A stretch of DNA of 64,000 nt. It comes from Octopus sinensis (lineage: Eukaryota). Where the stretch lies: positions 52,328,001-52,392,000 of the forward strand of contig NC_043010.1 in assembly GCF_006345805.1 (NCBI RefSeq), in the 5' to 3' direction. Position numbers and translations under genes: made by a program. Under the pieces are notes generated by a model. The model was not told where the DNA came from, did no database searches, and was given only the letters and a program-made list of their open reading frames with translations. How positions within the stretch are numbered: the stretch's first letter is position 1; each line of letters starts with the position of its first letter. Of the stretch, positions 18,761-51,200 are shown piece after piece.

Positions 18761-18861
18761 GAAACAGATGGGTAAAATATGGACACAAGCAGGGGAACAC
18801 AGCGTCCACACATGGTTTTACGTAGAATATTTTTTATCAACATGGGGGTAGAATATATTCC

Positions 18862-23769: not shown

Positions 23770-24450
23770 CTGTCAGGTTCAGCATCTGGTTGCAAGGAAT
23801 CTTGCTCTTTTGTCTCTGCGTCACGCTTGATTTGCACTTCAGCCTTTCTTTGATACTAGTGTCGTATCGGTTCGGCTTCGGCTTCAAGTATAAGAGTGGA
23901 TGTTGTTGCACAACTTTTAGACACAAAATATTTGTCAATATACACTTTTGAACGTATAAAAATACCAACTCACGTGGAGCCCATTTGACTTGCGTCTGTC
24001 TGTCCGCGAGATAGATAGAAAGTATAATGAAGGTGCAGCGGCATTACTTGCATGCCTTCATCTTTTTCTTTTTCTTTTATACAATCTTTATTTAATTCTG
24101 AGAGTTCGGTGGTGTCACAGGTTCCTCTTTTTTTTGGGGGGGGGGGTGAGTTCGGTACTGCTGTCAACTGCATCTGTATCGTTGTCGCTGCTTTGGTTTT
24201 TATTTTCCATCATGTCCATTACTTTAAGTACGTTTTCTTCATCGGACGGAACTGCGTGATCCAATTTGTAATTCAGTAGCATGATTATCAAAAAGTATTT
24301 CCCATATGGCTGGGTTGAGCTTAAGTTTAGATTTTTACAAGAAAGTATGCTGGATTCGGTAACTTGTATTTAATATATCTTTGTTTGAAAGCCTCTTTTT
24401 CTTCTGACGGAGCTAAAGTGTCGAATGCGTAGCACAAATATTTTATTTTT
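23770..24450 (-). pseudogene. Decayed coding-like sequence of unknown family
   Basis: Protein-like stretches across frameshifts (KYLCYAFDTLAPSEEKEAFKQRYIKYKLP / KLNPAIWEILFDNHATELQIG / acidic-basic tail). No family recognised. Confidence 0.3.
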
Positions 24451-24534
24451 AATCCGTAGAAGTTACGAGGTAATTAAGCAATTCAACGCCCGTAAGTTCC
24501 ATGCATGCGTGTTATATACCCATACATATGTGCG

Positions 24535-24539
<5 letters not shown>

Positions 24540-24630
<91 letters not shown>

Positions 24631-24866: not shown

Positions 24867-24959
24867 AGATTCTTTTTTATTAGAAATCGTCATAACTGTA
24901 ATGATGTATACATACATCTGTTTGCACACACATACAGAAGTGCATAAAGTTATGTAATT

Positions 24960-26034: not shown

Positions 26035-26990
26035 TCGTGAAAATTTGTTAAGCACCCTGCTCTACATAATGCAACCTTGCAGAATGCACATTGGAAAGTT
26101 GTTTCAACAGCCCTTCCACTAGGAGCTTTCCTTGTTTGATGAAGGCATTCACGACACTGCCTTTTGCGACCCTCCATTTTTTTCTAATTTATGGAGATCG
26201 GCTGAATTCAGAAGGATATCCCTCTGGCAGGCATTGCTTTTTCTCCCTACGGTTATTTTTTTTTTTTAGGAATAACCAGCTCTTAGTTGCGTTACTACAT
26301 CTGCTCGGAACTGTAGATGGTCGCATCGCTTCCGAGCCGGTCCTGATTTGGCATATAGTATAAACACATTAGTAATACTCATGTTTACTATATACCAAAC
26401 CAGTTATCGTGACCATTTATTCCCCGGTCTGCCAACTGGATAGTAAGACATCATCTGATTCAGCCGATCTACTCCACCCATCTACTTGTTATAATCAAGG
26501 TTCACAAACGGCGTGCCATTTTCATCCACATGTGGCCGTGCACAGGTAGACAGACAATTGATCGCGGTCGCTAGCAAATTTCCTTTCTGCCGTTGATGGC
26601 AATATCGCGGTGATTAATTCCTTTTAGACTTGGATATGCAGAAGCCATTTCACCTTTTTTTTTATATCCAACGGCAGTCCTTTTCTACTAGCGATCACTG
26701 TAGCACATGTATGTGTTGCCACAGTATCTAAATTCTCTGCAAGTTTGATCGAACTGAAAAATCGGTCAATAAAATAATATACGGCCCTGGTTATGGTATG
26801 GAAGTGATAAATTCCAGACCACATCGTACCCTAGGCCATGCTGACTTACATGATTGTCTCTTTTGCCTGTATAAAATTCGAATCCTGAGCAGCACCCAGT
26901 ATTTGATTCGCAAATCTTCCAAACTTTGATCCCCCATTTTGTGGGCTTTCGGGGCATATACTGTCAGAAACGTACCCGGCCTTTATAGCC
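26035..26990 (-). pseudogene. piggyBac transposase, 3' half including cysteine-rich domain
   Basis: YMPRKPTKWGIKVW, DRFFSS, DYNK.MGGVDRLNQ, and CRECLH...CAFCKVALCRAGCLTNFH. Confidence 0.9.
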
Positions 26991-27163: not shown

Positions 27164-27259
27164 AGGCCGACCTCATATTCACTTTGAATAAGGTTTAAAA
27201 AAGGAAAAAGGTTTTTATTTACAAGCATTTCATTAATCACATTACACAAAATACTTCCA

Positions 27260-27552
27260 CCTTGATTCTGGTTGTTTTTCTTCCCAGATATGAGTGTGAA
27301 AGAATTACTTTGTCTGTTTTTACAGTTCTTGCTGCCATCCTCCAAGCAGTTTCTTCAGTTCTAAGCTATACTACCACAGTGCCGTACCTATTTCCTCCTC
27401 TGTCTTCCTGAGTCAATGAGGGGTGTTATTTGGTTCTTCACGTACTGGTGTACTGCTCAGGTCTCTTATACGTAAATGCTGTGACCTGACGTCATTTAGG
27501 AAGCGCCCTTGCTTCCAGTTCGACGACAGGCTACGCACATTTATGCAGCCCA
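27260..27552 (-). mobile_element. L1/Tx1-like LINE pieces (ORF1 fragment + APE N-terminus), chimeric module copy
   Basis: GTVVV.LRTEETAWRMAARTVKTDKVIL..GRKTTRIKVE and VGCINVRSLSSNWKQGRFLNDVRSQHL. Confidence 0.65.
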
Positions 27553-28040
27553 CACTCAGATGAAAGGTATCAAAATTTTTTTTTTGGCTACTCGCTCTAT
27601 CCCACCGAAAAGCCGGATAGTTTTTGGGAGTCTTCCACAATTATACTTTCTTCTTACAATAACTGTTTCATTAATCTCTACTTCAACTCCTGGTCCACCG
27701 ATTTGGTCCTGGTAATTTTCAGCCCCAATGCTGACAAACCTCCAAGCAGAAGGATCGCCAATCAATCGAGGTCGGATATGAAATGTTTAAATTTTCCATG
27801 ACTAATGCATGCGACCAACAGTCTGTAAGGAAGTAATTTACAAATAACAGGATTTTACAGGGTGGTATCTGACTCCCCTCGAAAAAAAGTGTTGTTGTAT
27901 AGCGATATAGAATATCCACATTGCGTTGGCCTTTGTCTTCGGCGGCGAACAGTCCTTCCACATCAGAAGATGCTTGTATTTTCGTGGAGTGTACATTGTA
28001 AATGGCATCTAGGGCAGTCAACTGTGCAAAATATTTCCAC
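27552..28040 (-). pseudogene. Merlin transposase (lineage B), truncated copy
   Basis: CPRC..., SIDWRSFCLEVC, IGGPGVEVEINETVIVRRKYNCGR. Confidence 0.85.
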
Positions 28041-28250
28041 CTTGATTCTGGTTGTTATTCTTCCCAGATATGAGTGTGGGTGTACTGCTCAGGTCTCTTA
28101 TACGTAAATGCTGTGACCTGACGTCATTTAGGAAGCGCCCTTGCTTCCAGTTCAACGACAGGCTACGCACATTTATGCAGCCTACCTGAATGCGAGACAT
28201 CACCTACCTTAAATGGTCATCTTTGTTTTTTCGGCTGTTCGTGGGATGAA
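28040..28250 (-). mobile_element. LINE APE N-terminus, chimeric module copy
   Basis: IQVGCINVRSLSLNWKQGRFLND (ORF 28018-28203). Confidence 0.65.
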
Positions 28251-28251
28251 A

Positions 28252-29100
28252 TTATCTCGGGCCAGGATAAAGACTTGCTGCTGCCAATAAGAATACGTGT
28301 ATTCTCTTGGCTGTAGGTTTGATGCTTTCTGTAAATAGGAACTTGGCGGGGTATTGCTTTAAGCAACAGGCACGAATCCCTGGGCGAACAACTGATCTCT
28401 TAACTGACCCCCACAATCTCTCTATCGTCTGTGTGTGCACCGATGCGTTTGTGGGATCAACAAAATTTTCATTGTGGTTGATGCGGAAGTGGGTATAGCC
28501 GAGATTTCTAAAAGAGTTATATGCAGCCCAAGAATCGCTATATACTATGGACCCTTGGCGTATATATCTGGTAATTAAGGGGATCAGTGTGGCGGCATCT
28601 CGCCTTTCCTCTTCACCACACTCAGATGAAAGGGGTATCAAAACTTTTTTTTGGGCTACTCGCTCTGCCGCACCGAAAAGCCAGATAGTTTTTGGGAGTC
28701 TTCCACGATTGTACTTTCTTCTTACAATAACCGTCTCATCGATCTCTACTTCAACTCCTGGTCCACCGATTTGGTCCTGGTAATTTTCAACCCAATGCTG
28801 ACAAACCTCCAAGCAGAAGGATCGCCAATCAATCGAGGTCGGATATGAAATGTTTAAATTTTCCATGACTAATGCATGCGACCAACAGTCTATAAGGAAT
28901 TTATAAATAACAGGACTTTACAGGGTGGTATCTGACTCCCCTCGAAAAAAAGTGTTGTTGTATAGCGATATAGAATATCCACATTGCATTGGCCTTTGTC
29001 TTCGACGGCGAACAGTCCTTCCACATCAGAAGATGCTTGTATTTTCTCGGAGTGTACATTGTAAATGGCATCTAGAGCAGTCAACTGTGCAAAATATTTC
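28252..29100 (-). pseudogene. Merlin transposase (lineage B), near-complete
   Basis: VEIDETVIVRRKYNRGR, YSDSWAAY, HTQTIERLW (DDE triad). Frameshifts in the 5' part. Confidence 0.9.
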
Positions 29101-29129
29101 CAATTTGGTTTTTCACATACTGGTAAAGT

Positions 29130-30010
29130 TCATGTCACGTATTTGCAAATGGTTTGACCTAACGTCATTTAGGAAGCGCCCTTGCTTCCAGTTCGACAAC
29201 AGGCCACGCACATTTATGCAGCCAGCCTGAATGCAAGACACCACCTACCTTAAATGGTCGTCTTTGTTTTTTCGGCTGTTCGTGGGATGAAATTTCGATA
29301 TATGTCCTCGAACAACGACTCGTGTAAGTTGTGTCAAGGACCGTAAATGTCAGCTTTATATTTAGAGCGTATAGTTTCCCAGTTTAACTGATCGATTTAG
29401 TAGATTTCCGTATGTTTGAGTAATACCCTGTGTGTTCGAACCCGTTCCGCTGATAGGGTGTTATCAATGTCATGCAATAGACTGTCCTTCTATTTATTGA
29501 TAGCTTTGTATACCATCTCTAGAGTAATTTTTTTCTTTTCCTGGACATTGTGGGGGTGATAGGGTGGAGTCTGGGTGGGGAGGAAATTGTTCAGCACTGA
29601 GGGGTAGGGGTGGTTGTCTAGAGTTGGATGCAGGGGGGGGGGGGCGGTTCTTGTGGTGGGGTGGGGTATTTTTTTTCTTGTTTGTGCTTGGGGTTTTTGT
29701 GCTTCTTTTAGGAGTTTTTCTGTCTCACTGGAGTGAAATCGTTTTCTTCTGTCGGCGTCCTGTTGTTTTTTCCCTACTTTATCCTTTCGCCTTTCAACAC
29801 ATCACCGCTTCCTTCTTCCTTTTTTGCGGGTGGGGCAGTCCACTCAAATGTGGCCCATTTGTAGCACCGGGGTTTTTGCCCCTCTACCACCACTCGCAAA
29901 GTGATCTCTTCACTGAAGTTGATGTTCTCTACAATTTCTTCTAGCATTTCTGGTGCTGCCTGGATGGTAACTTTAAGGCTCTGGCTCTGCTCGGTCGGTC
30001 AACCATTTCT
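29130..30010 (-). mobile_element. L1/Tx1-like LINE: ORF1 3' part (broken zinc knuckle) and start of ORF2 APE
   Basis: LRVVVEGQKPRCYK..GHI.VDCP, ORF1 tail, then CINVRGL..WKQGRFLND. Confidence 0.6.
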
Positions 30011-31910: not shown

Positions 31911-32149
31911 GTTCAGCAGACATGCTTTTGCCTGCAGCTTGCATACCCAACAGTGGGTAGCAACAAAACAATTTTTCGAATGTGCAACAAAGATGTTACA
32001 AATTATACAGACTAGAATATGAAGATAAACGTTTACATTATCCGTTCGATATTACAAATTATATAAAAGAAAGTAAATTAAGAAATAAGAGAAAAAAATT
32101 ATGTGTAACCCTAAAGATATTTTATGTAGTTAAAGAGCTTCATTGATTT

Positions 32150-32480
32150 CCCTGAAATGTTGTTGGAAAGAGACTGATGGTTTATTAGGTGAAGTTTGTC
32201 TGTTGGTTTCCATGTAGTCTTCATGACACCAATCATTAAGTTGCTGAATTGTTTCATCTGTTGTAGTTAATAAGAATTGCCTAGGGGGTTTGCAAAAGTA
32301 ATTAGCTTATGCAGATGGAAATTTTACACGCTGTGCGTTTGGTATCTTATGCTTTTACCCTGTAGCCTTCCAGTATTCCTGGATAGTTTTCTGCCAAGTG
32401 CTGTCATTTGATGGACAACGTTGAGAACTACATTTCCACATTATGTGAAAATGATTGTGTTCCAATATTTGTTTGTGTCC
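32150..32480 (-). pseudogene. Putative parvovirus-like NS1 N-terminal HUH endonuclease fragment
   Basis: ILEHNHFHIMWKCS (HUH-like) and downstream AQRVKFPSA*ANYFCKPPRQF (Y..K-like). No full domain. Confidence 0.45.
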
Positions 32481-32483
32481 ATT

Positions 32484-33640
32484 TGGTTTCCATAAGTAGG
32501 AACTTGGCGAGGTATTGCTTTAAATAACAGGCACGAATCCCTGGGCAAACAACTGATCTCTTAACTGACCCCCACAATCTCTCTATCGTCTGTGTGTGCA
32601 CCGATGCGTTTGTGGGATCAACAAAATTTTCATTGTGGTTGATGCGGAATTTCTAAATTTCCCCTTCAATAGTCTCTCCTTTGGTGAAGTAATCTCCTTC
32701 TTTCTGACAGTAATCTATATTCTGTTTTTCTGATCCTTTTGCCATCTCGACATGTGCTCTCGGAGAAATCCTTTTTTTCATAGCCTTAAGGCTAACTCTA
32801 ACAACAGTGTGAATATATCCCTGAAGATGTATAGTTCCAGTGGTGGATATTTCCTTTCCCACAACCATGTAACGTATATGGTCCAAATTATTAATTCTAT
32901 GTACATCTTCCTCATTGTAGTTGTTCAGTGTGAAACAGAAGCGATGGTATCTTTGTGTGAGGCATTATAGCTAGTAGTCTTCTAATTATATTGAAAGTTG
33001 CATTGAAATGATATTTATATACATTCAGCCTCCCTCCCCCCCCTACCCTGACGCACTTCCAAGAATCACTATATACTATGGACCCTTGGCGTATATATCG
33101 GGTAATTAAGGGGATCAGTGTGGCGGCATCTCGCCTTTCCTCTTCACCACACTCAGATGAAAGAGATATCAAAACTTTTGTTTTGGCTACTCGCTCTACC
33201 GCACCGAAAAGCCAGATAGTTTTTGGGAGTCTTCCACGATTGTACTTTCTTCTTACAATAACCGTCTCATCGATCTCTACTTCAACTCCTGGTCCACCGA
33301 TTTGGTCCTGGTAATTTTCAACCCAATGCTGACAAACCTCCAAGCAGAAGGATCGCCAATCAATTGAGGTTGGATATGAAATGTTTAAATTTTCCATGAC
33401 TAATGCATGCGACCAACAGTCTGTAAGGAAGTAATTTATAAATAACAGGACTTTACAGAGTGGTATCTGACTCCGCTCCAAAAAAAGTGTTGTTGTATAG
33501 CGATATAGAATATCCACATTGCGTTGGCCTTTGTCTTCGACGGCGAACAGTCCTTCTACATCGGAAGATGCTTGTATTTTTTCGGAGTGTACATTGTAAA
33601 TGGCATCTAGGGCAGTCAACTGTGCAAAATATTTCCACCT
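32484..33640 (-). pseudogene. Merlin transposase (lineage B) copy interrupted by a CRESS Rep insert
   Basis: Colinear with 28340-29095 on both sides of 32658-33058. Confidence 0.88.
32658..33058 (-). pseudogene. rep: Endogenous CRESS-DNA virus (circovirus-like) Rep, HUH endonuclease domain plus upstream TATA region
   Basis: One frame reads RFCFTLNNY (motif I, ~32920-32940), TIHLQGY (motif II, ~32820) and HVEMAKGSEKQNIDYCQKEG (motif III, ~32700). ATG at 32965 is one base out of frame. TATATAAA at 33014-33021. Confidence 0.9.
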
Positions 33641-34262
33641 TGATTCTGGTTGTTTTTCTTCCTATATATGAGTGGAAAAGAATTACTTTGTCTGTTTTTA
33701 CAGTTCTTGCTGCCATCCTCCAAGCAGTTCCTTCAGTTCTAAACTACACTACCACAGTGCCGTACCTATTTCCTCATGCGAGAAAAATTATTTCTTCCTG
33801 AGTCAATGAGGGGGTCTTATTTGGTTCTTCACGTACTGGTGTAACGCTCATGTCACGTATTTGCAAATGGTGTGACCTGACGTCATTTAGGAAGCGCCCT
33901 TGCTTCCAGTTCGACGACAGGCCACACACATTTATGCAGCCTACCTGAATGCAAGACACCACCTACCTTAAATGGTCGTCTTTGTTTTTTCGGCTGTTTG
34001 TGGGATGAAATTTCGACATATGTCCTCGAACGACTCATGTAAGATTTGTCGAGGACCGTAAATGTCAGCTTTATATTTAGAGCGTATAGTTTCCAAGTTT
34101 AACTGATCGATTTAGTAGATTTCCGTATGTTTGGGTAATACCCTGTGTGTTCGAACCCGTTCTGCTGATGGGGTGTTATCAATGTCATGCAATAGACTGT
34201 CATTCTATTTATTGATAGCTATGTATACCATCTCTAGAGTCATTTTTTTCTTTTCCTGGACA
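33640..34262 (-). mobile_element. LINE ORF1/APE chimeric module, longest copy
   Basis: Near-identical to 27260-27552 plus 29130-29540. Confidence 0.7.
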
Positions 34263-34270
34263 TATAACTT

Positions 34271-34770
34271 TTATGAGTTCTGTTTAATTTGATCTTGCTT
34301 GAATTTAACTAACACTTCCGTATCAGTTCCCTCGGCTAATTTTTTAAATGTTTGTAATGTTTTGAGGGTGAAGTTTGGCTCTTCAATTAGACCAATTTCT
34401 ACGTTTATCAGATTCTGAAACGGAAAGCTGCTGGTACCTTGAATGGTGCTGACGTGTGTGCTATCATGGATTTGCCGGTGTTTGGTAATCCTCTCAGAAC
34501 TGAAAGGTTTCTTTTGGGTTTTTTCTTTGTTAAAGTTTCCCAAACGTTTTGTACGAATAGCGCTTCGCAAATGTCTTGTGTCATTAAAATACTTTTGAAG
34601 ACTTTCAGTGACATATCTTTGTCCATATATTCATTTTTGTTATTATCAAAAAGTTCCCAGTTCATGCTCTTTAAATGGCACAAGTGTTTTTAATTTTATG
34701 CATTCTAATACTTTTTTCATTGCTGTATCGTACATTGGGTGGCTTATAGCCCTCATAAAGTTTTAGTTGT
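34271..34770 (-). pseudogene. NS1: Endogenous parvovirus-like NS1 fragment (SF3 helicase)
   Basis: NFMRAISHPMYD...NLSVLRGLPNTGKS (Walker A) / IQGTSSFPFQNLINVEIGLIEEP (Walker B) ...FKKLAEG. Internal deletion and frameshifts. Confidence 0.8.
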
Positions 34771-34819
34771 TAAGCCAGTGCGACTTCATTTCTTGCTCAC
34801 TTCGAAATTTTTTACTTAT

Positions 34820-34821
34820 AC

Positions 34822-34863
<42 letters not shown>
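34820..34863. repeat. (TA)n
   Basis: Seen directly. Confidence 0.95.
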
Positions 34864-34867
<4 letters not shown>

Positions 34868-35849: not shown

Positions 35850-36830
35850 AAAGCCATTGGCACTCGTGTCCACTCCCACATACATCTGTATGTATGCATA
35901 CACAACAGGAACTAGAAAAGAAAAAGGTAAAAATAGCAAAGAAATTTTGTGTTAACCACTGGAATTCAGTAGAGATAAATCTTGGTAATAGTTCTGAGAG
36001 AGTGATGTAGAAATTCTGGAAGCTTTTCTTCGCCAGATGGTCAACCACATTAACAGGTTAAGTTCGACTTTGCCCCAGTCCTTTAGCTATGGCATGCTGC
36101 GACTTGTTTCGTAAATGAAAAGTCTATTTTTGAGAGCCTGTTCTTCCTGTAGAACAACACGCCATGGGTCTTGAATGGAAGTTGATAATGACGAAGTTCT
36201 TTTTAATATTCTTTCCACCTGATGCTTAATGCTTATGTATGTATCTGTGCCTTCTAGAATACATTTCGCTTCTTCAACGTTGTTTGTTGTGAACCACATT
36301 TTGTCGGTGTATATTAATGTTTTGTCGATGCACGTGCCGAACGTGAAATTTTCGCTGGCTTGGCATCTCATTCTGCCGCAGTTCATCAATCCGTTCCTGA
36401 TGCTTCTTAAGACGTAGCTTTTACCCGAGTTACTTGCTCCTGTAATATGCAAGCCGTTAATTTGGGGATTAAGTTTATGACAGACTTCGAATGTGTGTCT
36501 ACCGAATTTTTCTGTGTCTATGTTGTGGTGGTGTAGCCACTCGTCGTATATATCCAGCGATGTTTGAACGTTATGGTAGTTGTTTGTGTTATATGAGAAG
36601 AATTGTTTCTTGTCTCTGATTTGTTCCCATATGGGCATGCTCAATGTTTCAATATTTGTTTCTGTGGCTGCGGCCGTAATTATTGTTAATGTTTGGAGTG
36701 TTTCTGTAGATGTTCCTCCAGTTATTTTGGTATTGTAGTTTCGGCGTGTTTTTGCAGAATCTTATGTCCCCCATGTCTGTGCTGTTGCATTTCTTCATAA
36801 TTTTCTTAATGAAGTCGTATTTGTGGCATC
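35850..36830 (-). pseudogene. NS1: Endogenous parvovirus-like NS1, second lineage (~1 kb)
   Basis: QINGLHITGASNSGKS (Walker A), TLIYTDKMW (B), EEAKCILEG, SLSTSIQDPW..EQALKNRLFIY (C / Arg finger region). Confidence 0.82.
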
Positions 36831-37265
36831 TCAACAATCTTGCCAGACCTACCTTTCAGTGTGCCAACGTTGAGGGTGTGGGAGGTATGGGCCCTAGAGA
36901 CCGTGGGACGGTCAACAGTAGCTTCATGATCCTGGTTCAGCATCGTACACACCGCATTATACCTTCGCTCCTGAACTGCCTCAATTACCTTATCTACCCA
37001 TTTTTCAGCGAGAAGTATACCCATGCTCCCAGCCCCGTCAGTGTTCCTTGACCAGAAAATCTTATACCTGTGTTCTTTGCCTGTGAGGAACCTAGCAGAA
37101 GCCTCTCCACCTCACTTCTTGGATGCAACATATATCAACACATCTCCATTCGGGCTTCTCAACAATCTCACCAGACTTACCTTTCGGTGTTCCAACGTTG
37201 AGGGTGTGAGAGGTATGGGCCCTAGAGACCCTGGGACGGTGAACAGTAGCTTCATGATCCTGGTT
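36830..37265 (-). mobile_element. Two tandem RTE-type LINE APE N-terminal fragments, each fused to an ankyrin tail
   Basis: TLNVGTLKGRSGKIVEM and TLNVGTPKGKSGEIVE...VDICCIQEVRWRG. Confidence 0.75.
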
Positions 37266-37269
37266 CAGC

Positions 37270-38740
37270 ATTAGAGACACCATATCATACCTTCGCTCCT
37301 GAACTACCTCAGTAGTGTGTTACCACCTTTGTCCACCACATTGACATCGATGCCATTTTACTCAACATGCCAACTGTGTTTGTGTATCCACTTGAACAGG
37401 CACAGTATAGAGGTGTGTGACCATTCTTATCTCGTGCATTCACCTCAACAGCGCTATGTTTTATTAATGCTGCCACAACATCTGTCCATTCCTTCTCACA
37501 TGACCCTGCTGCCAAACAGAGAGGTGTCTGGCCATATTTGTTTTTCACGTTGACATTGCTGCCCCGAGATAGTAAGATCTTCATTTTCAAGTTATATATA
37601 TGTATATTGTTTCCAGAGAGTTTCTTATCTCGTAGATTCTCCTGAACGGTACTCTGTTGTATTAATGCTGCCACGACATCTGTCCATTCCCTCTTACATG
37701 ACCCTGCTGCCAAACGGAGAGGAGTCTGGTTCTTCACGTTTATCTCGCTGCTCCGAGATCGTAAGATCTTCATTTTCAAGTTATCTATATGTACATTGTT
37801 TCCAGAGAGTTTCTTATCTCGTGGATTCTCCTGAACGGTACTCTGTTGTATTAATGCTGCCACGACATCTGTCCATTCCCTCTTACATGACCCTGCTGCC
37901 AAACGGAGAGGAGTCTGGTTCTTCACGTTTATCTCGCTGCTCCGAGATCGTAAGATCTTCATTTTCAAGTTATATATATGTACATTGTTTCCAGAGAGTT
38001 TCTTATCTCGTGGATTCTCCTGAACGGTACTCTGTTGTATTAATGCTGCCACGACATCTGTCCATTCCCTCTTACATGACCCTGCTGCCAAACAGAGAGG
38101 AGTCTGGCCATATTTGTTCTTCACGTTTATCTTGCTTCTCCGAGATCGTAAGATCTTCATTTTCAAGTTATATATATGTATATTGTTTCCAGAGAGTTTC
38201 TTATCTCGTGGATTCTCCTGAACAGTATTCTGTTGTATTGATGCTGCCACGACATCTGTCCATTCCTTCTTACATGACCCTGCTGCCAAACGGAGAGGAG
38301 TCTGGCCATATTTGTTCTTCACATTCACGTCGCTACCCCGAGATCGTAAGATCTTCAGATTCAAGTTATATGTATGTATGTTGTTTCCAGAGGAGTCTGG
38401 ACATATTAGTTATTAGTTCTTTACATTCACCTCGATGCTCCGAGATATTAAGATTTTCACGGCTTCAAGATGACGTCTATACACAGCATTATGTAGAGCT
38501 GTCCAACCACAGAGGTGTCTTGCATCTATAAACATCTCAATTATTCTTGTGTTGTCCCTTACATGGGAATACATTAATGGAATTCGTCCCCTTACATCAT
38601 GGTGGTTAATTTTAACTGGGTGCTTCTCTATTAAGGTTTTCACACCTTCAGCGTCACCATCTTCAATTTTATCAAAGATTGTATAATACATCATGTCTTC
38701 AAATTCGATTATTGGGTTTTGATTCCGGGTTGATGTCTTT
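37270..38740 (-). pseudogene. Intronless ankyrin-repeat gene, disrupted, with internal ~200-bp tandem expansion (open 351-aa ORF 37309-38364)
   Basis: Repeated VNVKNKYGQTPL.LAAG, VNARDKNGHTPLYCAC, GWTALHNAV...EAVKILI. Confidence 0.8.
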
Positions 38741-38802
38741 CTATCTGAGAAAAATTAAGTGTCTGCTTGTTCAAACGATGATGAAAGTATATACACACAC
38801 AC

Positions 38803-41157: not shown

Positions 41158-41379
41158 TATATATGTATACAATAATATATGTTGTACATACCTTAATTTT
41201 TTCATGATATTGTAGCGATTTTATGACAGTGTAGCAAAATAGTAGTCAATTAGATAAATACATTTTTTTTCTGGGGTATTTTTTTTCAACCTCGTCACAT
41301 ATTTGCACCTTTCAATTTAAGTCTTAATTAAGCAATTGCGGCAGCTTAGCAGAAATGTCACGTTCTAATTTCTGTTATT

Positions 41380-42062
41380 CAATGGTTTCAATACACTCGT
41401 GACATCATACCCCTTCAAATTTTATACCATTCTGAAAGATGTTTCAGAATATTCATCTCACAATCGTTTTCATTTTGTCCATACTGTTCCTTCCACAGAA
41501 ACTCAAGGTACGAGTCCACCATGGTGGAATGTATCCTCATCATCGTTTTAAATTTTCTTTTCAATGGTTTCAATACACGCGTGACATCATACCCCTTCAA
41601 ATTTTATACCATTCTGAAAGATGTTTCAGAATATCATCACACAATCGTTTTCATTTTGTCCATACTGTTCCTTCCACAGAAACTCAAGGTACGAGTCCAC
41701 CATGGTGGAATGTATCCTCATCATCGTTTTAAATTTTCTTTTCAATGGTTTCAATACACGCGTGACATCATACCCCTTCAAATTTTATACCATTCTGAAA
41801 GATGTTTCAGAATATTCATCACACAATCGTTTTCATTTTGTCCATACTGTTCCTTCCACAGAAACTCAAGGTACGAGTCCACCATGGTGGAATGTATCCT
41901 CATCATCGTTTTAAATTTTCTTTTCAATGGTTTCAATACACGCGTGACATCATACCCCTTCAAATTTTATACCATTCTGAAAGATGTTTCAGAATATTCA
42001 TCACACAATCGTTTTCATTTTGTCCATACTGTTCCTTCCACAGAAACTCAAGGTACGAGTCC
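41380..42062. repeat. ~182-bp tandem repeat (about 3.7 units) of the Merlin A 3' coding end
   Basis: Unit starts CAATGGTTTCAATACAC at ~41380, 41563, 41744, 41926. Confidence 0.9.
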
Positions 42063-42840
42063 ACCATGGTGGAATGTACCCCCATCATCGTTTTAAATTT
42101 TCTTTTTGCATTTTTCCAGTAACATTCCACAGAATTTGTGTGTACACCTGTTAGCGGATCCACAAAATTCTGGGAATAGTTTACTGTGAAATGGATGTAT
42201 TTTGGTGTCACATCCATTTCTGCAATCCCATTATAGGCGGCCCAGCAATCCGAATGAATTGTTGTGCCCTGTCTAATATATTTTTTGATGATGGGTAGCA
42301 GAGTTTCCGAGGAACGGTCACCTACGAAGAGTAGGAAGCCTTTTTTCTCTTCTCTATCATAACCTCCAAAGACCCATCTCTCTTGTGGTGTTCTCCCTCT
42401 ATTGTACTTCCTCTTGCACATCAGACTTTCATCTATTTCAACAACTTTTCCGACACCACCAATTTGGTATGGATTGTTGACCAGATTGTTACTACAGATA
42501 TCTCGCATGTATTGGAACCATTGAATAACGGTACATTTTGACAATCCAGTCATTGCTATTGTTGCTGTTATTGTTAGGTTATTGCCCCAACAATATATTA
42601 TATGTATGAAATCATGTAGTTTCAATCTGCTATTTTCGAGATAGGAGTTCCTTCTAATTGATTCTTTTTCCCCTTTGTGAGTTGGGCAGCGAAATACTTT
42701 TTCTTGATTGTGTTTTATCAGTCATCTCTCTCTGGCATCTCGAACAATTTGGCGAAGAGCAACTTAAAGACCTTTTTGTCCTTGAGGAAGGAATAAATAC
42801 TATCAAAGTCTTTCACGATACTTTCTATCTCATACAACAT
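41960..42840 (-). pseudogene. Merlin lineage A transposase, frameshift near the 5' end
   Basis: MLYEIESIVKDF.. start, VEIDESLMCKRKYNRGR, IHSDCWAAY, HTNSVECYW. Confidence 0.92.
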
Positions 42841-44419: not shown

Positions 44420-44890
44420 AATGAAAAATATCCCATTCTGGTATTCTCAGTCAATTGTTCTAATATTTCAGGCTCCGCATGCATGTTCAATTCCAAAACT
44501 GCACCCCCCCCAGCCTTCATATCTCGTGCACTCACCTCAAGAGCGCTATGGTTCATTATTGCTTTCACAAAATCTGTCCATTTCTTCTCACATGACCCTA
44601 CTGTCAAATGGAGGAGAGTCTGGCCTTATTAGTTCTTCACATTCATCTCGCTGCTCCGAGATATTAAGAGCGTCACAGCATCCGTTTTATGGCTATTCAC
44701 AGTATCATGTAAGGCTGTCCAACCACGGAAGTGTCTTTGCATCTATAAACATCTCAATTATTCTTCTGTTGCCGTTTACACAGGCAAACATTAAAGGAGT
44801 TTGGTTTTGAATTTTACGGATACTGCAGTGTCTACTCCTTCAGCCAACTTTATGAAGGTTTGAAGCGTTTCTAACGTCATGTTAGGTTCC
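44420..44890 (-). pseudogene. Ankyrin-repeat gene fragment
   Basis: GSCEKKWTDFVKAIMNHSALEVSARD, same family as 37270 and 45360. Confidence 0.7.
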
Positions 44891-45360
44891 TAAAAGAGGC
44901 AAATTTCGGTCTGGTACATATCTTGGAAAGGGAAAGAAGATGTACCTTGTATTGTTTCTGAATATCGAAAGAGTTGTGCAATACTGCGACAAATATATGA
45001 TTTTCCACTACTTGGGACTCCTTTAAGTACGAAAGTGTTTGTTTTTGGAAGTTTTTGATTTAGAAGATTCCATACGTCTGTTACAAATTCATCTATAAGA
45101 ATGTTTTGTACTTTCAATATATTTTGAAATATACGTAGTGATGTAGCTACAGTGTGATATTCACGAACATGGAATTTATTCCATTTCATGTTTTGGAATT
45201 TAGTGGCGAGTATTTCCATTTTGCATGAATCGGCCACATTTCTGGCTATTGAATCAAACATAGGATGAGCTAAAGCTCCTAAGAAATTTTCATTGTTTTG
45301 CTTCTGGCACCACTCTTGCTTCATCTTAATGAGTGCATATTCTTTGAGTCCGGATAACTA
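44890..45360 (-). pseudogene. NS1: Endogenous parvovirus-like NS1 fragment embedded in the ankyrin array
   Basis: ENFLGALAHPMFD...KTNTFVLKGVPSSGKSY...IQGTSSFPFQDMYQTEICLF. Open 144 aa, related to 34271-34770. Confidence 0.83.
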
Positions 45361-48300
45361 TTTAATATAGTTGAACAATTTCATTGATCTACCTGCAGTG
45401 TTTATCTTGTGGATTCACCAGAACTGCGCACTGTTGCAATGATACTGCCTCCACATCTGTCCATTCCTTCTCACATGACCCTGCAGCCAAATGGAGGGGA
45501 GTCTGGCCATATTAGTTCTTTACATTCACCTCGATCCTCTGAGATATTAAGATTTTCACGGCTTCAAGCTGACGCCTTTACACAGCATCATGTAGAGCTG
45601 TCCAACCACAGAAGTGTCTTGCATCTATAAACATCTCAATTATTCTTGTGTTGCCCCTTACATGGGAATACATTAAAGGAGTTTGTCCCCTTACATTACG
45701 TTTGTGAATTTGATCTGGATTCTTCTCTGTTAAGGTTTTCACACCTTCAGCGTCATCATCATTGATTTTATCAAAGATTGTATAATACGCTCCTGAACTG
45801 CCTCTGGTGTGTTACCACCTTTGTCCACCACATTGACATCGATGCCATTTTACTCAACATGCCAACTGTGTTTGTGTATCCACTTGAACAGGCACAGTAT
45901 AGATGTGTGTGACCCTTATCTCGTGCATTCACCTCCAGAGCGCTATGTTTTATTAATGCTGCCACGACATCTGTCCATTCCTTCTCACATGACCCTGCTG
46001 CCAGATGGAGAGGAGTCTGGCCGTATTAGTTCTTCACATTCACCGCGCTGCTCCGAGATATTAAGAGCTTCACAGCATCCGTTTTATGGCTATTCACAGT
46101 ATCATGTAAGTCTATCCAACCACGGAATTGTCTTGCATCTATAAACATCTCAATTATTCTTCTGTTGCCATTTACACAGGCAAACATTAAAGGAGTTTGT
46201 CCCTTTAATTTGATCTGGCTTCTTCTCTATTAAAGTTTTCACACCTTCAGCATCATCATATCTGGATTCATTCTTCACATTCACCTCGCTGCTCCGAGAT
46301 ATTAAGAGCGTCACAGCATCAGTTTTATGGTTATTCACAGTATCATGTAAGTCTTTCCAACCACGGAATTGTCTTGCATCTATAAACATTTCAATTATTC
46401 TTCTGTTGCCGTTTACACAGGCAAACATTAAAGGAGTTTGTCCCCTTACATTAGGTTTGTGAATTTGACCTGGCTTCTTCTCTATTAAGGTTTTCAAACC
46501 TTTAGTGTCACCATCTTTGATTTTATCAAAGATTGTATAATACGCCATGTCTTCAGATTCGATTATTGGGTTTTTATTCTGGGTTATGTATATGTTTTTG
46601 TGTATCCACTTGAACAGGCACAGAGTAGAGGTATGCGACCATTCTTATCTCTTGCATTCACCAGAACACCGCTCTGTTGCAATAATACTGCCATCCCATC
46701 TGTCTATTCCTTCTCACATGACCCTGCGGCCAAATGGAGGGGAGTCTGGCCATATTAGTTCTTTACATTCACCTCGATGCTCCGAGATATTAAGAGCTTC
46801 ACTGCTTGATGTTGATGCCTATTCTCAGCATCATGTAAAGATGTCCAACCACGGAAGTGTCTTGCATCTATAAACATCTCAATTATTCTTGTGTTGACCC
46901 TTACATGGGAATACATTAAAGGAGTTTGTCCCCTTACATTACGCTTGTGAATTTGATCTGGATTCTTCTCTATTAAGGTTTTCACACCTTCAGCGTCATC
47001 ATCATTGATTTTATCAAAGATTGTATAATACGCTCCTGAACTGCCTCTGGTGTGTTACCACCTTTGTCAACCGCATTGACATCGAGCCATTTTACTCAAC
47101 ATCGCAACTGTGTTTGTGTATCCACTTGAACAGCACAGTATAAGAGGTGCGACCTATCTCGTGCATTCACCTCAAGAGCGCTATGTTTTATTAATGCTGA
47201 CACAACATCTGTCCATTCCTTCTCACATGACCCTGCTGCCAGATGGAGAGGAGTCTGGCCGTATTAGTTCTTCACATTCACAGCGCTGCTCCGAGATATT
47301 AAGAGCTTCACAGCATCCGTTTTATGGCTATTCACAGTATCATGTAAGGCTATCCAACCACGGAATTGTCTTGCATCTATAAACATCTCAATTATTCTTC
47401 TGTTGCCATTTACTCAGGCAAACATTAAAGGAGTTTGTCCCCTTAATTTGATCTGGCTTCTTCTCTATTAAAGTTTTCACACCTTCAGCATCATCATATC
47501 TAGATTCATTCTTCACATTCACTGCGCTGCTCCGAGATATTAAGAGCGTCACAACATCCGTTTTATGGTTATTCACAGTATCATGTAAGGCTATCCAACC
47601 ACGGAATTGTCTTGCATCTATAAACATCTCAATTATTCTTCTGTTGCCATTTACTCAGGCAAACATTAAAGGAGTTTGTCCCCTTAATTTGATCTGGCTT
47701 CTTCTCTATTAAAGTTTTCACACCTTCAGCATCATCATATCTAGATTCATTCTTCACATTCACTGCGCTGCTCCGAGATATTAGGAGCGTCACAACATCC
47801 GTTTTATGGTTATTCACAGTATCATGTAAGGCTATCCAACCACGGAATTGTCTTGCATCTATAAACATCTCAATTATTTTTCTGTTGCCGTTTACACAGG
47901 CAAACATTAAAGGAGTTTGTCCTCTTAATTTGATCTGGCTTCTTCTCTATTAAAGTTTTCAAACCTTCAGTGTCACCATCTTTGATTTTATCAAAGATTG
48001 TATAATACGCCATGTCTTCAGATTCGATTATTGGGTTTTTATTCTGGGTTATGTATATGTTTTTGTGTATCCACTTGAACAGGCACAGAGTAGAGGTATG
48101 CGACCATTCTTATCTCTTGCATTCACCAGAACACCGCTCTGTTGCAATAATACTGCCATCCCATCTGTCTATTCCTTCTCACATGACCCTGCGGCCAAAT
48201 GGAGGGGAGTCTGGCCATATTAGTTCTTTACATTCACCTCGATGCTCTGAGATATTAAGAGCTTCACTGCTTGATGTTGATGCCTATTCTCAGCATCATG

Positions 48301-50370
48301 TAAAGATTAACCACGGAAGTGTCTTGCATCTATAAACATCTCAATTATTCTTGTGTTGACCTTACATGGGAATACATTAAAGGAGTTTGTCCCCTTACAT
48401 TACGCTTGTGAATTGATCTGGATTCTTCTCTATTAAGTTTTCACACCTTCAGCGTCATCATCATTGATTTTATCAAAGATTGTATAATACGCTCCTGAAT
48501 GCCTCTGGTGGTTACCACCTTTGTCAACCACATTGACATCGCTGCCATTTTACTCAACATGCCAACTGTGTTTGTGTATCCACTTGAACAGGCACAGTAT
48601 AGATGTGTGCGACCCTTATCTCGTGCATTCACCTCAAGAGCGCTATGTTGTATTAATGCTGCCACAACATTCTGTCATTCCTTTCACATGACCCTGCTGC
48701 CAGATGTGGAGAGGAGTCTGGCCGTATTAGTTCTTCACATTCACAGCGCTGCTCCGAGATATAAGAGCTTCACAGCATCCGTTTTATGGTATTCACAGTA
48801 TCATGTAAGTCTATCCAACCACGGAATTGTCTTGCATCTATAACATGTCAATTATTCTTCTGTTGCCGTTTACACAGGCAAACATTAAAGGAGTTTGTCC
48901 TCTTAATTTGATCTGGCCTCTTCTATTAAAGTTTTCACACCTTCAGCATCATCATATCTGGATTCATTCTTCACATTCACCTCGCTCCTCCGAGATATTA
49001 AGAGCGTCACAACATCCGTTTTATGGTTATTCACAGTATCATGTAAGGCTATCCAACCACGGAATTGTCTTGCATCTATAAACATCTCAATTATTCTTTT
49101 GTTGCCGTTTACACAGGCAAACATTAAAGGAGTTTGTCCCCTTACATTACGTTTGTGAATTTGATCTGGATTCTTCTCTATTAAGGTTTTCACACCTTCA
49201 GCGTCATCATCATTGATTTTATCAAAGATTGTATAATACGCTCCTGAACTGCCTCTGGTGTGTTACCACCTTTGTCAACCACATTGACATCGCTGCCATT
49301 TTACTCAACATGCCAACTGTGTTTGTGTATCCACTTGAACAGGCACAGTATAGATGTGTGCGACCCTTATCTCGTGCATTCACCTCAAGAGCGCTATGTT
49401 TTATTAATGCTGCCACAACATCTGTCCATTCCTTTTCACATGACCCTGCTGCCAGATGGAGAGGAGTCTGGCCGTATTAGTTCTTCACATTCACAGCGCT
49501 GCTCCGAGATATTAAGAGCTTCACAGCATCCGTTTTATGGCTATTCACAGTATCATGTAAGTCTATCCAACCACGGAATTGTCTTGCATCTATAAACATG
49601 TCAATTATTCTTCTGTTGCCGTTTACACAGGCAAACATTAAAGGAGTTTGTCCTCTTAATTTGATCTGGCCTCTTCTCTATTAAAGTTTTCACACCTTCA
49701 GCATCATCATATCTGGATTCATTCTTCACATTCACCTCGCTCCTCCGAGATATTAAGAGCGTCACAACATCCGTTTTATGGTTATTCACAGTATCATGTA
49801 AGGCTATCCAACCACGGAATTGTCTTGCATCTATAAACATCTCAATTATTCTTTTGTTGCCGTTTACACAGGCAAACATTAAAGGAGTTTGTCCCCTTAC
49901 ATTACGTTTGTGAATTTGATCTGGATTCTTCTCTATTAAGGTTTTCACACTTTCAGCGTCATCATCATTGATTTTATCAAAGATTGTATAATACGCTCCT
50001 GAACTGCCTCTGGTGTGTTACCACCTTTGTCTACCACATTGACATCGATGCCATTTTACTCAACATGGCAACTGTGTTTGTGTATCCACTTGAACAGGCA
50101 CAGTATAGATGTGTGCGACCCTTCTTAATCTCGTGCATTCACCTCAAGAGCGCTAAGTTTTATTAATGCTGCCACAACATCTGTCCATTCCTTCTCACGT
50201 GACCCTGCTGCCAAATGGAGAGGTGTCTGGCCATATTTGTTCTTCCAGTTTATCTCGCTTCTCTGAGTTATTAAGAGCTTCACAGCTTCAGTTTGATGGT
50301 TATTCACAGCATCATGCAAAGCTGTCCAACCACGGAAGTCTCTTGCTTCTATGTACGCTGCCGCTAGCAG
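45360..50370 (-). repeat. ~5-kb tandem array of rearranged, decayed intronless ankyrin-repeat gene copies
   Basis: Marker TGATTTTATCAAAGATTGTATAATACG recurs at ~45765, 46520, 47010, 47985, 48470, 49215, 49970. GQTPLMFACVNG, VNARDKG repeated. Confidence 0.85.
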
Positions 50371-50574
50371 ATTTCCTGTCTGCTGTTGGGTTATTTACAG
50401 TACTGGGAATAATATTGTTTGCGAAAGAAATCTAGTCCCTCACTGTCATTATTAAATTGGCGAATTCCATCTTGTAATGTCAGGTCACAAGAATTGTGAA
50501 GTGCCATTCTGTTGTTGAAGACCAAGTGTATCATACAACTTAACGCTTGTGTACTATTTATTACTTGATAAATC

Positions 50575-50650: not shown

Positions 50651-50654
50651 GCCT

Positions 50655-50760
50655 CTTATCTCTTTAAGTTTAATACATTCAAGGACCTTCTTCATTATGG
50701 TATCATACATTGGATGGCTTATAGCTCTCATGAAATTTTCTTTGTGTTTATTTAGCCAAT
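50655..50760 (-). pseudogene. NS1: Short NS1 fragment (same lineage as 34271-34770)
   Basis: KENFMRAISHPMYDTIMKKVLECIKLK versus NFMRAISHPMYDTAMKKVLECIKLK. Confidence 0.75.
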
Positions 50761-51200
50761 GAGATTTCATTTCTTACTGGTGAAAATATACGTGGTGAGG
50801 GAATGGGTGGGGTTGTCAATGGTAAGAGAGATGTCAAGGAAGTTAACAGAGGTGTCAGAGATAGAAGTGAATTGAAGAGAAGGGTGGAAGCTAGAAGAAA
50901 GAGATGAAGTGGCAGTTGTTCATGGGAGAGGGAGGTGGCACCTATAGTCATCTATGTAGCGACCATATAGCTCTGGGGCCAGCCTGGAGAATTGAGAGAA
51001 TGCTTGGGGCTCATTCTCATCCCCATCATGACTCCAGACTCCTGTTGGTAGGTTTCCCCAGCGAACGTAAAGCAGTTGAGGGTGAGGATGAGCTCTGCCA
51101 GGTGGAGAAGGGTGGGGGTGCTGAGTGTGGGGTCAGGGTGACGATCGAGGAAGTATTGGAGGGCTAAGAGACCATCGTTGTGTGGAATTACCGTGTATAG
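50760..51200 (-). pseudogene. Penelope-like element reverse transcriptase fragment
   Basis: TLLHLAELILTLNCFSFAGETYQQ.SGV.MG, GRYIDD (50947-50958), FHPSLQFT, VNFLDISLTI. Confidence 0.85.

What the first reader, a model, noticed from the sequence alone, without database searches (positions are those of the whole stretch)
34271..34770. Parvovirus-like NS1 EVE lineage 1, present as three separated pieces in the block
Seen: this fragment, 44890-45360 and 50655-50760 share ENF..A..HPM(Y/F)D, and the two longer ones share Walker A G.P..GKS and IQGTSSFPFQ. The pieces at 34.7 and 50.7 kb are close (NFMRAISHPMYDT.MKKVLECIKLK), while the 45 kb piece is much more diverged. Inference: at least two related but distinct parvoviruses were captured independently, suggesting repeated infection of the germline by an uncharacterised cephalopod parvovirus clade.
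Basis: partly seen in the sequence, partly recalled or inferred. Interest (0 to 1): 0.7.

Follow-up and report, generated by a model that had tools for sequence, protein, structure and literature searches.

The report
Broken parvovirus-like NS1 fossils in octopus DNA
The flagged stretch is one of six broken, same-strand remnants of parvovirus-like replication (NS1) genes buried among transposons in an octopus-like genome; they come from several long-diverged viruses rather than from local copying, but this kind of viral fossil has been reported in octopus since 2016.

Summary
Minus-strand pieces at 34280-34816, 44806-45402 and 50654-50788 are parvovirus-type NS1 helicase remnants: Pfam Parvo_NS1 scores above its cut-off and family-profile E-values reach 1e-59.

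Two belong to the same lineage: the HUH nuclease part (32112-32487) and the C-terminal part (24079-24431). Both go with the 45-kb piece. The third is a distinct second lineage at 35955-36855.

Relatives in a tubeworm genome and a third host's genome sit next to capsid genes carrying the parvoviral PLA2 domain. The origin is therefore viral, not a transposon helicase.

The pieces are not local duplicates. The two "close" pieces are about 90% identical in protein, yet their synonymous sites are saturated. True local duplicates in the same window (ankyrin units) give pN/pS near 1 with pS of 0.13 or less.

At least three source genomes contributed to lineage 1. All pieces lie on one strand within 27 kb, with no capsid remnant. 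Five of the six carry stops or frameshifts. Same-strand arrays of deeply diverged units recur in two other hosts, and that is unexplained.

The clade was already reported (François et al. 2016), so this is a new member of a known kind.

The parts
50654..50788 (-). Piece A: short NS1 fragment of about 40-45 codons, just upstream of the helicase core, sublineage 1a. It has no stop or frameshift inside the homologous span.
   Evidence: tblastn and profile hits (E = 5e-11). It is 86-91% identical in protein to D but about 74% in DNA, with pS near saturation. Its 3' flank, 50572-50646, repeats 26450-26522.
44806..45402 (-). Piece B: NS1 linker plus helicase core (Walker A, Walker B, B' region), sublineage 1b. 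It lacks motif C and everything after it. It reads in one frame, with 2 in-frame stops and no frameshift.
   Evidence: Pfam Parvo_NS1 22.8 bits and PPV_E1_C 31.7 bits. Family profile 6e-59. It is 73-84% identical to O. bimaculoides P0001 and Logan P0004, and colinear with L005 1114-1711. Ankyrin units flank it on both sides, ending at 44803 and starting at 45402.
34280..34816 (-). Piece D (the flagged fragment): the same gene segment as B, sublineage 1a. It is broken by 2 frameshifts and at least 1 stop, and lacks motif C and everything after it.
   Evidence: Pfam Parvo_NS1 29.6 bits. Profile 1e-34 and 1e-28. It is 58-91% identical to O. vulgaris P0008, O. bimaculoides P0009 and P0010. A (TA)n tract at 34812-34865 abuts one end; the repeat 33819-34263, a copy of 29103-29548, abuts the other.
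32112..32487 (-). Piece E: NS1 N-terminal nuclease region carrying the HUH motif and the active-site tyrosine motif, sublineage 1b. It has 1 frameshift and 2 stops.
   Evidence: tblastn to P0005 residues 83-199. It is 76% identical in DNA and 75% in protein to L005 773-1166, against 46% to the O. vulgaris copy. The motifs are visible in the translations.
24079..24431 (-). Piece F: NS1 C-terminal region after motif C, sublineage 1b. It has at least 2 frameshifts and at least 1 stop.
   Evidence: tblastn to P0004 residues 54-171. It is 74% identical in DNA to L005 1753-2105. Simple repeats at 24466-24950 abut its 5' end.
35955..36855 (-). Piece C: a second, distinct NS1 lineage covering the helicase and part of the upstream region. 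It is at most 28% identical to lineage 1. It has at least 1 frameshift and at least 1 stop.
   Evidence: Pfam Parvo_NS1 1e-13. Its own family profile gives 2e-122. 42 homologue clusters at 48-80% identity, including Acanthosepion pharaonis, and 66% protein identity to L012.
32656..32964 (-). Neighbouring fragment of a different virus type: the N-terminal nuclease domain of a CRESS-DNA-virus Rep, as an open 103-codon stretch.
   Evidence: Pfam Viral_Rep PF02407, E = 4.9e-23, 81.6 bits against a cut-off of 26.
45402..50394 (-). Tandem array of ankyrin-repeat-coding units that separates A from B. Further units lie at 44344-44803 and 37294-38754. The units are decaying neutrally.
   Evidence: Self-blastn, TRF, Pfam Ank_2. 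pN/pS is 0.9-1.4 with pS 0.04-0.13.
33059..34263 (-). Truncated Merlin/IS1595-like transposon copy that abuts the 3' end of piece D.
   Evidence: 94-96% identical to 27247-29548. Its DDE_Tnp_IS1595 match is below the Pfam cut-off (19.6 bits against 27); the copy at 28255-28917 passes it.

Best explanation
The flagged fragment is one of six non-functional, endogenised remnants of parvovirus-type NS1 (replication initiator and helicase) genes. They lie in a transposon-rich stretch of an octopus-like genome.

Five pieces belong to one lophotrochozoan-associated parvovirus clade, in two sublineages:
- 1a: pieces A and D.
- 1b: pieces B, E and F, which together tile one NS1.
The sixth piece, C, belongs to a second clade.

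The pieces diverged from one another while under purifying selection, that is, as replicating viruses, before they were fixed here. Lineage 1 alone therefore needs at least three source genomes (A, D, and B/E/F).

Inferred history: double-stranded replicative forms or head-to-tail concatemers of such viruses were joined into germline DNA by host break repair. Later arrivals probably went into or next to the resident copies, which would explain the single orientation. The insert was then eroded and spread over 27 kb by Merlin and Tc1 transposon insertions, microsatellite growth, tandem amplification of ankyrin-coding units, and deletions that removed the capsid gene.

None of the pieces can make a working helicase. 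B and D lack motif C and everything after it, and five of the six carry stops or frameshifts.

Shown: identity, viral kinship, brokenness, non-duplicate status, orientation, flanking repeats.
Inferred: the integration route, the order of events, and the absence of any present function.
For: Identity:
- Pfam Parvo_NS1 scores above its cut-off for B, D and C.
- A family profile matched against PDB puts AAV Rep40/68 (4.5e-11) and parvovirus NS1 (4e-10) ahead of papillomavirus E1 (8e-9).
- The HUH and tyrosine motifs are present in piece E and are invariant in long relatives.

Viral kinship:
- NS1 relatives are followed on the same strand by capsid genes with the parvoviral PLA2 domain PF08398. 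This is seen in L011, L008 and Lamellibrachia L013.
- A named relative is the NS protein of 'Turdus hortulorum parvoviridae sp.' (6e-45). Many unnamed relatives sit on contigs of about 4 kb.

Not duplicates:
- A vs D: pN 0.08, pS about 1.
- B vs D: pN 0.31, pS 0.75.
- D vs the O. vulgaris copy: pN 0.07, pS about 1.
- B vs L005: dN/dS 0.07.
- By the same method the ankyrin units, which are true local duplicates, give pN/pS 0.9-1.4 with pS of 0.13 or less.
- Each sublineage has its own nearest relatives in other octopus species.

Tiling: L005 is colinear with E, B and F.

Endogenous and eroded: break counts and host repeats at the piece ends.

Completeness: profile scans of all six frames find only these six pieces.
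Against: - No capsid remnant and no terminal hairpin were found in the window, so the viral context rests on relatives.
- Low dN/dS cannot tell evolution in a virus from evolution as a selected host gene family.
- The tblastx-based counts favour conserved stretches, and A vs D rests on only 35 codons.
- The ends of the pieces cluster at two places in the gene (post hoc p of about 0.01-0.04). E, B and F tile one gene almost exactly yet lie out of order. Plain independent insertions do not predict either fact.
- The host species is inferred only from best hits.
- Mis-assembly of this repeat-rich region cannot be excluded.
Confidence: 0.75

Rival explanations
1. There was one integration event of a mixed concatemer. 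Several co-infecting, already diverged parvovirus genomes were joined head-to-tail and inserted once. Later insertions and deletions scattered the parts.
For: - All six pieces share one strand within 27 kb.
- Compact head-to-tail arrays of NS1-VP units exist in L011 and L013.
- E, B and F tile one gene.
Against: - Units within the L011 array differ by saturated synonymous divergence. Co-packaging of such distant genomes in one event, three times over in three hosts, is less likely than stepwise accretion.
- The E and B overlap of about 46 nt is only about 80% identical.
- Decay differs between pieces, from no break to at least three.
Confidence: 0.15
2. The pieces are pseudogenised members of a host gene family that descends from one ancient NS1 capture. 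That family then duplicated and evolved under selection in cephalopod genomes.
For: - dN/dS is low between copies.
- Open NS1-like reading frames of 170-290 residues are annotated in O. vulgaris and O. bimaculoides.
- The second lineage is multicopy in cephalopods.
Against: - Relatives keep the whole viral gene pair, NS1 plus PLA2-bearing VP, in three hosts, and a VP-like stretch lies beside the cuttlefish copy.
- Copies are intronless and contiguous where intact.
- Close uncultured relatives sit on genome-sized contigs of about 4 kb.
- No synteny was seen between the window and the O. vulgaris copy.
Confidence: 0.1
3. The block is a uni-strand small-RNA (piRNA-cluster-like) locus. The viral and transposon remnants are retained in one orientation because their antisense transcripts feed a defence pathway. 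This is an addition to the main explanation, not an alternative origin.
For: Every coding remnant seen from about 18.5 to 51.3 kb is on the minus strand: seven or more Merlin pieces, Tc1, an RT piece, the ankyrin arrays, a CRESS Rep and six NS1 pieces. The next LINE, at 54.7-57.7 kb, is on the plus strand.
Against: - No small-RNA or expression data are available here.
- Part of the strand bias comes from direct local duplications.
- The compact arrays in L011 and L013 are equally one-stranded without any visible transposon trap.
Confidence: 0.2
4. The pieces are local duplicates of one insertion, or they are non-viral SF3 or transposon helicases. These are the reader's own refutation cases.
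For: - The ends of B and D fall within a few codons of each other, and A and D start within a few codons of each other.
- The papillomavirus E1 helicase model also passes its cut-off for B.
Against: - Synonymous sites are saturated while pN is low, against neutral ankyrin controls.
- The flanks are not homologous.
- HUH nuclease motifs are present, capsid genes with PLA2 lie beside relatives, and the PDB profile ranking favours parvoviral Rep/NS1.
- The D5-like model DUF5906 scores below its cut-off.
Confidence: 0.03

Closest known systems
Parvovirus-related sequences of Octopus bimaculoides (KOF81493) and Lamellibrachia sp., reported by François et al. 2016, Sci Rep 6:30880 (PMC5013282)
   Same: Same clade. 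KOF81493 appears to be P0009: the letters shown in the paper's alignment excerpt match it by eye; no alignment was run. P0009 is 62-85% identical to piece D. Lamellibrachia proteins are family members. The paper reports that the marine mollusc sequences branch outside all known parvovirus genera.
   Different: The paper lists single short sequences. Here there is a 27-kb locus with six pieces from two clades and at least four sources, all on one strand. There is also evidence on selection and on the linked PLA2-bearing capsid genes of relatives.
Endogenous parvoviral elements (EPVs) of animal genomes in general (e.g. PMC9707805, PMC6631224)
   Same: Fragmentary germline copies of parvovirus genes carrying stops and frameshifts.
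   Different: Most described invertebrate EPVs are reported as ambidensovirus-derived (PMC6631224). This clade has same-strand NS-then-VP order and a PLA2-bearing VP in relatives.
Hamaparvovirinae (chapparvoviruses, penstyl-, hepan- and brevihamaparvoviruses)
   Same: Short monosense genomes. Many nearest unnamed relatives sit on contigs of about 4 kb.
   Different: Their VP proteins lack the PLA2 domain (PMC6631224). The VPs next to this family's NS1 carry PF08398 above its cut-off. The clade is therefore not filed there.
Scattered fragments of the shrimp virus IHHNV (Penstylhamaparvovirus) in Penaeus monodon genomes
   Same: Multiple partial pieces of a parvovirus genome fixed in a marine invertebrate genome. 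[quoted passage not shown]
   Different: The shrimp fragments derive from one known, still circulating virus. Here the sources are several deeply diverged, unsampled viruses, and only NS1 parts remain.
Mosquito non-retroviral EVEs in piRNA clusters (e.g. PMC7522710)
   Same: Viral remnants sit among transposon remnants with a uniform orientation.
   Different: Those EVEs are from RNA viruses, and small-RNA production and antiviral effect have been shown for them. Nothing of that kind was tested here.

Membership tests
Parvoviridae NS1/Rep-derived sequence | SF3 helicase domain matching the Parvo_NS1 model (PF01057) above its gathering score | tested here: met
   D 29.6 bits, B 22.8 bits and C 51 bits against a cut-off of 20. 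Relatives score 60-62 bits.
Parvoviridae NS1/Rep-derived sequence | Complete set of helicase motifs (Walker A, Walker B, B', motif C) | tested here: not met
   Walker A, Walker B and the B' region are present in B and D. Motif C and all later residues are missing from both, because the pieces end before them. They are remnants, not genes.
Parvoviridae NS1/Rep-derived sequence | N-terminal HUH nuclease with an HUH motif and an active-site tyrosine motif | tested here: met
   Both motifs are present in piece E and invariant in three long relatives. This is motif-level evidence only: no Pfam N-terminal model hit, and the AF2 model was too poor (pLDDT 37.6) for a fold search.
Parvoviridae NS1/Rep-derived sequence | Linked capsid gene, with a VP1 PLA2 domain in most lineages | tested here: inconclusive
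   Met for relatives: PF08398 at 29-46 bits against a cut-off of 23.9 in L011 and L008, and also in Lamellibrachia L013. Not found in the window by tblastn, tblastx or a VP profile.
Parvoviridae NS1/Rep-derived sequence | Terminal hairpins or inverted terminal repeats | not tested
   The pieces are internal gene fragments bounded by host repeats, so no termini are expected. The termini of relatives were not examined.
Endogenous viral element | Embedded in host sequence, with disrupted reading frames | tested here: met
   Ankyrin units, a Merlin copy, microsatellites and other window repeats abut the pieces. Five of six pieces carry stops or frameshifts.
Hamaparvovirinae | VP without a PLA2 domain (PMC6631224) | tested here: not met
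   VPs adjacent to family members carry PF08398.
Papillomavirus E1 helicase | PPV_E1_C helicase together with E1-type N-terminal domains, and no HUH nuclease | tested here: not met
   PPV_E1_C passes its cut-off for B (31.7 against 26.5). However, the family has HUH nuclease motifs, PLA2-bearing VP neighbours, and a PDB profile ranking of Rep/NS1 ahead of E1.
D5-like or transposon SF3/AAA+ helicases | Match to D5/primase-helicase or transposon helicase models above their cut-offs | tested here: not met
   DUF5906 scores 19.5 against a cut-off of 27.6. AAA, NACHT and the like are all below their cut-offs.
Uni-strand piRNA cluster | Strand-biased small RNAs from a locus of same-oriented mobile-element remnants | not testable with these tools
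   Only the orientation bias is seen. No small-RNA data are available.

The most novel reading that the evidence does not exclude
Resident copies of this parvovirus clade may act as landing sites for later, already diverged relatives, for instance by homology-guided joining. Alternatively they may be kept as same-strand arrays by selection, for instance as a small-RNA source. Either way, lophotrochozoan genomes would build one-stranded 'archives' of successive infections at single loci. The octopus window would be an old, transposon-eroded example. The compact NS1-VP arrays in Lamellibrachia satsuma and in the ENA host would be younger ones. The clustering of piece ends at two conserved places in NS1 would then mark preferred recombination joints.
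Probability: 0.25. Interest if true: 0.65.

Novelty: new member of a known kind. Interest (0 to 1): 0.4.

Why it matters
- The result adds a well-resolved locus to the sparse record of DNA-virus fossils in cephalopods.
- It shows that at least three lineage-1 parvoviruses, one virus of a second clade and a CRESS-DNA virus left traces within 27 kb.
- It ties the octopus sequences to a clade whose relatives keep a PLA2-bearing capsid gene. This helps to place an unclassified branch of Parvoviridae.
- If the same-strand accretion seen in three hosts is real, it bears on how non-retroviral DNA viruses enter germlines, and on whether such loci serve defence.
- As it stands, the fragments themselves are ordinary dead remnants.

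Tried and rejected
I used open stretches and local profiles instead.
- Capsid search in the window: VP proteins of relatives, a VP profile, and tblastx with the cuttlefish locus all found nothing.
- Exon hypothesis for the shared piece ends: rejected. The same stretch is contiguous in L005 and in the O. vulgaris copy.
- A shared NS1/ankyrin junction in B and D (a 'DQI' stretch): rejected. Those residues are native to sublineage 1a NS1.
- Synteny with the O. vulgaris copy: none outside the NS1 homology.
- Host and sample identity through SRA run numbers in the literature: no hits. No protein of the window is in the protein collection, so the species stays inferred.
- AlphaFold model of the nuclease domain from a three-sequence alignment: pLDDT 37.6, so no fold search was run.
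- Subfamily placement: no named reference set could be brought in. Only one named relative came back from the look-ups.

Full report
**1. What is at the coordinates**

On the minus strand, 34280-34816 (piece D) translates in three frames as a broken stretch of an NS1-type protein. 44806-45402 (piece B) gives the same protein segment in one frame. 50654-50788 (piece A) gives only its first 40-45 codons.

- Pfam calls Parvo_NS1 above its gathering score for D (29.6 bits) and B (22.8 bits). The papillomavirus E1 helicase model scores about as well.
- Within the window, A and D are 82-91% identical in protein and 75% in DNA.
- B is 38-48% identical to A and D overall, and 65-72% in the C-terminal part.

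**2. There are six pieces, not three**

Homologues from the large protein collection were used as tblastn queries and as a family profile against all six frames of the window. Besides A, B and D, three more pieces turned up:

- E (32112-32487): the N-terminal nuclease region.
- F (24079-24431): the C-terminal region.
- C (35955-36855): a distinct NS1 lineage, at most 28% identical to the others.

All six are on the minus strand, and nothing else in the window matches.

A 2.2-kb Logan contig, L005, is colinear with E (76% DNA identity), then B (69%), then F (74%). E and F are far closer to L005 than to the O. vulgaris copy of the other sublineage. Lineage 1 therefore splits in two:

- 1a: A and D. 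Nearest relatives are O. vulgaris 'nonstructural' P0008, O. bimaculoides P0009, and P0010.
- 1b: B, E and F. Nearest relatives are O. bimaculoides P0001, P0004 and L005.

In the genome the order along the minus strand is A, B, C, D, E, F. The 1b parts are therefore out of gene order.

**3. Viral or not**

- Long relatives carry an invariant HUH motif and a tyrosine motif ahead of the helicase. Piece E has both.
- A family profile searched against solved structures ranks AAV Rep40/68 (4.5e-11) and parvovirus NS1 (4e-10) ahead of papillomavirus E1 (8e-9).
- The genes next to relatives are the strongest evidence. In an 835-kb ENA contig (L011), in Lamellibrachia satsuma (L013) and on Logan contig L008, NS1 is followed on the same strand by a capsid gene. 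Its N-terminus matches the parvoviral PLA2 domain PF08398 above the cut-off.
- An exhaustive profile search finds 1826 representative clusters with E of 0.001 or better. Among those looked up are 'Turdus hortulorum parvoviridae sp.' NS protein, germline copies in a clam and a spider, and many unnamed proteins on contigs of about 4 kb.
- D5-like and other ATPase models stay below their cut-offs.

Because the neighbouring VPs carry PLA2, the clade does not fit Hamaparvovirinae, whose VPs lack it (PMC6631224). I could not place it further.

**4. Local duplicates or separate sources**

I counted synonymous and non-synonymous differences (Nei-Gojobori) over ungapped translated matches, without joining any frames.

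| Comparison | pN | pS | Note |
|---|---|---|---|
| A vs D | 0.08 | about 1 | 35 codons; checked by eye in alignment A1 |
| D vs the O. vulgaris copy | 0.07 | about 1 | |
| B vs D | 0.31 | 0.75 | |
| B vs L005 | | | dN/dS 0.07 |
| E vs L005 | | | dN/dS 0.16 |
| F vs L005 | | | dN/dS 0.21 |
| Ankyrin units (control; true local duplicates) | | 0.04-0.13 | pN/pS 0.9-1.4 |

The NS1 pieces therefore diverged under purifying selection over a long time, not by neutral decay after local copying. The flanks of A and D share nothing.

The E and B overlap of about 46 nt is only about 80% identical. B has no frameshift over about 200 codons. Together these lean towards E and B coming from different copies, but the sample is small.

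Lineage 1 alone needs at least three sources (A, D, and B/E/F), and C adds a fourth.

Caveats: translated-match selection favours conserved stretches, and low dN/dS cannot separate evolution in a virus from evolution as a selected host gene.

**5. State of the pieces**

| Piece | Frameshifts | In-frame stops |
|---|---|---|
| A | 0 | 0 |
| B | 0 | 2 |
| C | at least 1 | at least 1 |
| D | 2 | at least 1 |
| E | 1 | 2 |
| F | at least 2 | at least 1 |

Counts come and the translations above. B and D both stop short of helicase motif C. No capsid remnant was found.

**6. Surroundings**

- B fills the gap between two ankyrin-coding units of a tandem array (45402-50394 and 44344-44803). A lies 250-300 bp beyond the far end of that array. 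C lies about 440 bp from another such array (37294-38754).
- D is bounded by a (TA)n tract and by a truncated Merlin/IS1595-like transposon copy (33059-34263), whose sister copy is at 27247-29548.
- Between D and E lies an open 103-codon fragment of a CRESS-DNA-virus Rep (32656-32964; Viral_Rep 4.9e-23).
- From about 18.5 to 51.3 kb every coding remnant I saw is on the minus strand: seven or more Merlin pieces, Tc1, an RT piece, ankyrin arrays, the CRESS Rep and six NS1 pieces. The LINE at 54.7-57.7 kb is on the plus strand.

**7. Two things I cannot explain**

- The piece ends cluster at two places in the gene. The starts of A, B and D and the end of E fall within about 23 residues. The ends of B and D and the start of F fall within about 16 residues. 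A simulation gives p of about 0.01-0.04, chosen post hoc. An exon explanation fails, because the stretch is contiguous in L005 and in O. vulgaris.
- Same-strand arrays recur elsewhere. L011 holds five NS1 and four VP genes, and L013 at least four of each, all on one strand. L011 neighbours differ by saturated synonymous change with low pN: NS1 0.09 against 0.70, and VP 0.11 against 0.59. Diverged genomes sitting head-to-tail at one locus in three hosts suggests non-random integration or retention.

**8. Most likely account**

Shown:
- The pieces are endogenous, broken, parvovirus-type NS1 remnants from several long-diverged sources, embedded in host repeats, on one strand.

Inferred:
- Replicative double-stranded forms or concatemers were joined into germline DNA by host repair.
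- Later arrivals entered at or beside resident copies.
- Transposon insertion, microsatellite and ankyrin-array growth, and deletions then scattered the parts and removed the capsid gene.
- There is no present protein function.

A role as a small-RNA source is possible but untested.

**9. Comparison with what is known**

François et al. 2016 (PMC5013282) list a parvovirus-related sequence of O. bimaculoides, KOF81493. By eye, the letters shown in their alignment excerpt match P0009; I ran no alignment on this. They also list several sequences from Lamellibrachia. They note that the marine mollusc sequences branch outside all known genera.

My literature searches found no study of cephalopod parvoviral fossils beyond that.

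The finding is thus a new member of a known kind. What is new is the locus architecture.

**10. Handling note**

The context look-ups returned 21-kb host loci that happen to contain tandem provirus-like units. I printed none of their sequence and compared them gene by gene only.

Noticed in passing
window 32656-32964 (-): An open 103-codon fragment of a CRESS-DNA-virus (circovirus-like) Rep nuclease domain (Pfam Viral_Rep, 4.9e-23). It lies 170 bp from NS1 piece E. A second kind of ssDNA virus therefore left a trace in the same block.
   Followed up: partly
window 35955-36855 (-): A second NS1 lineage (piece C), at most 28% identical to lineage 1. Its family is multicopy in cephalopod data: 42 clusters at 48-80% identity, including the cuttlefish Acanthosepion pharaonis. 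A weak VP/PLA2-like stretch lies upstream of the cuttlefish copy on the same strand.
   Followed up: partly
window about 18500-51300: Every coding remnant seen in this interval is on the minus strand: Merlin/IS1595-like transposases, Tc1, an RT piece, ankyrin arrays, the CRESS Rep and six NS1 pieces. The LINE at 54697-57752 is on the plus strand. This resembles a uni-strand cluster, or it may be a product of direct duplications.
   Followed up: partly
L011 (ENA ERZ21939214, contig ctg11576l) and L013 (Lamellibrachia satsuma GCA_022478865.1): Compact head-to-tail arrays of NS1 and PLA2-bearing VP genes, all on one strand. Neighbouring units in L011 differ by saturated synonymous change with low pN, so they are not recent tandem copies.
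   Followed up: partly
window 45402-50394, 44344-44803, 37294-38754: Tandem arrays of ankyrin-repeat-coding units with higher-order periods of 189, 241, about 750, about 1240 and about 1480 bp. They are decaying neutrally (pN/pS of about 1). NS1 pieces A, B and C each lie in or beside such an array.
   Followed up: partly
window 18851-22804: A Merlin/IS1595-like element with inverted repeats of about 1 kb (18851-19864 against 21802-22804, 97.5% identical) around a transposase remnant at 20167-21053. A related copy lies at 41935-43077, with a 182-bp tandem array at 41378-42106.
   Followed up: no
NS1 gene coordinates of pieces A, B, D, E and F: The fragment ends cluster at two places in the gene, and E, B and F tile one NS1 with an overlap of about 46 nt and a gap of about 42 nt. 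The post hoc p is about 0.01-0.04. No mechanism has been established.
   Followed up: partly
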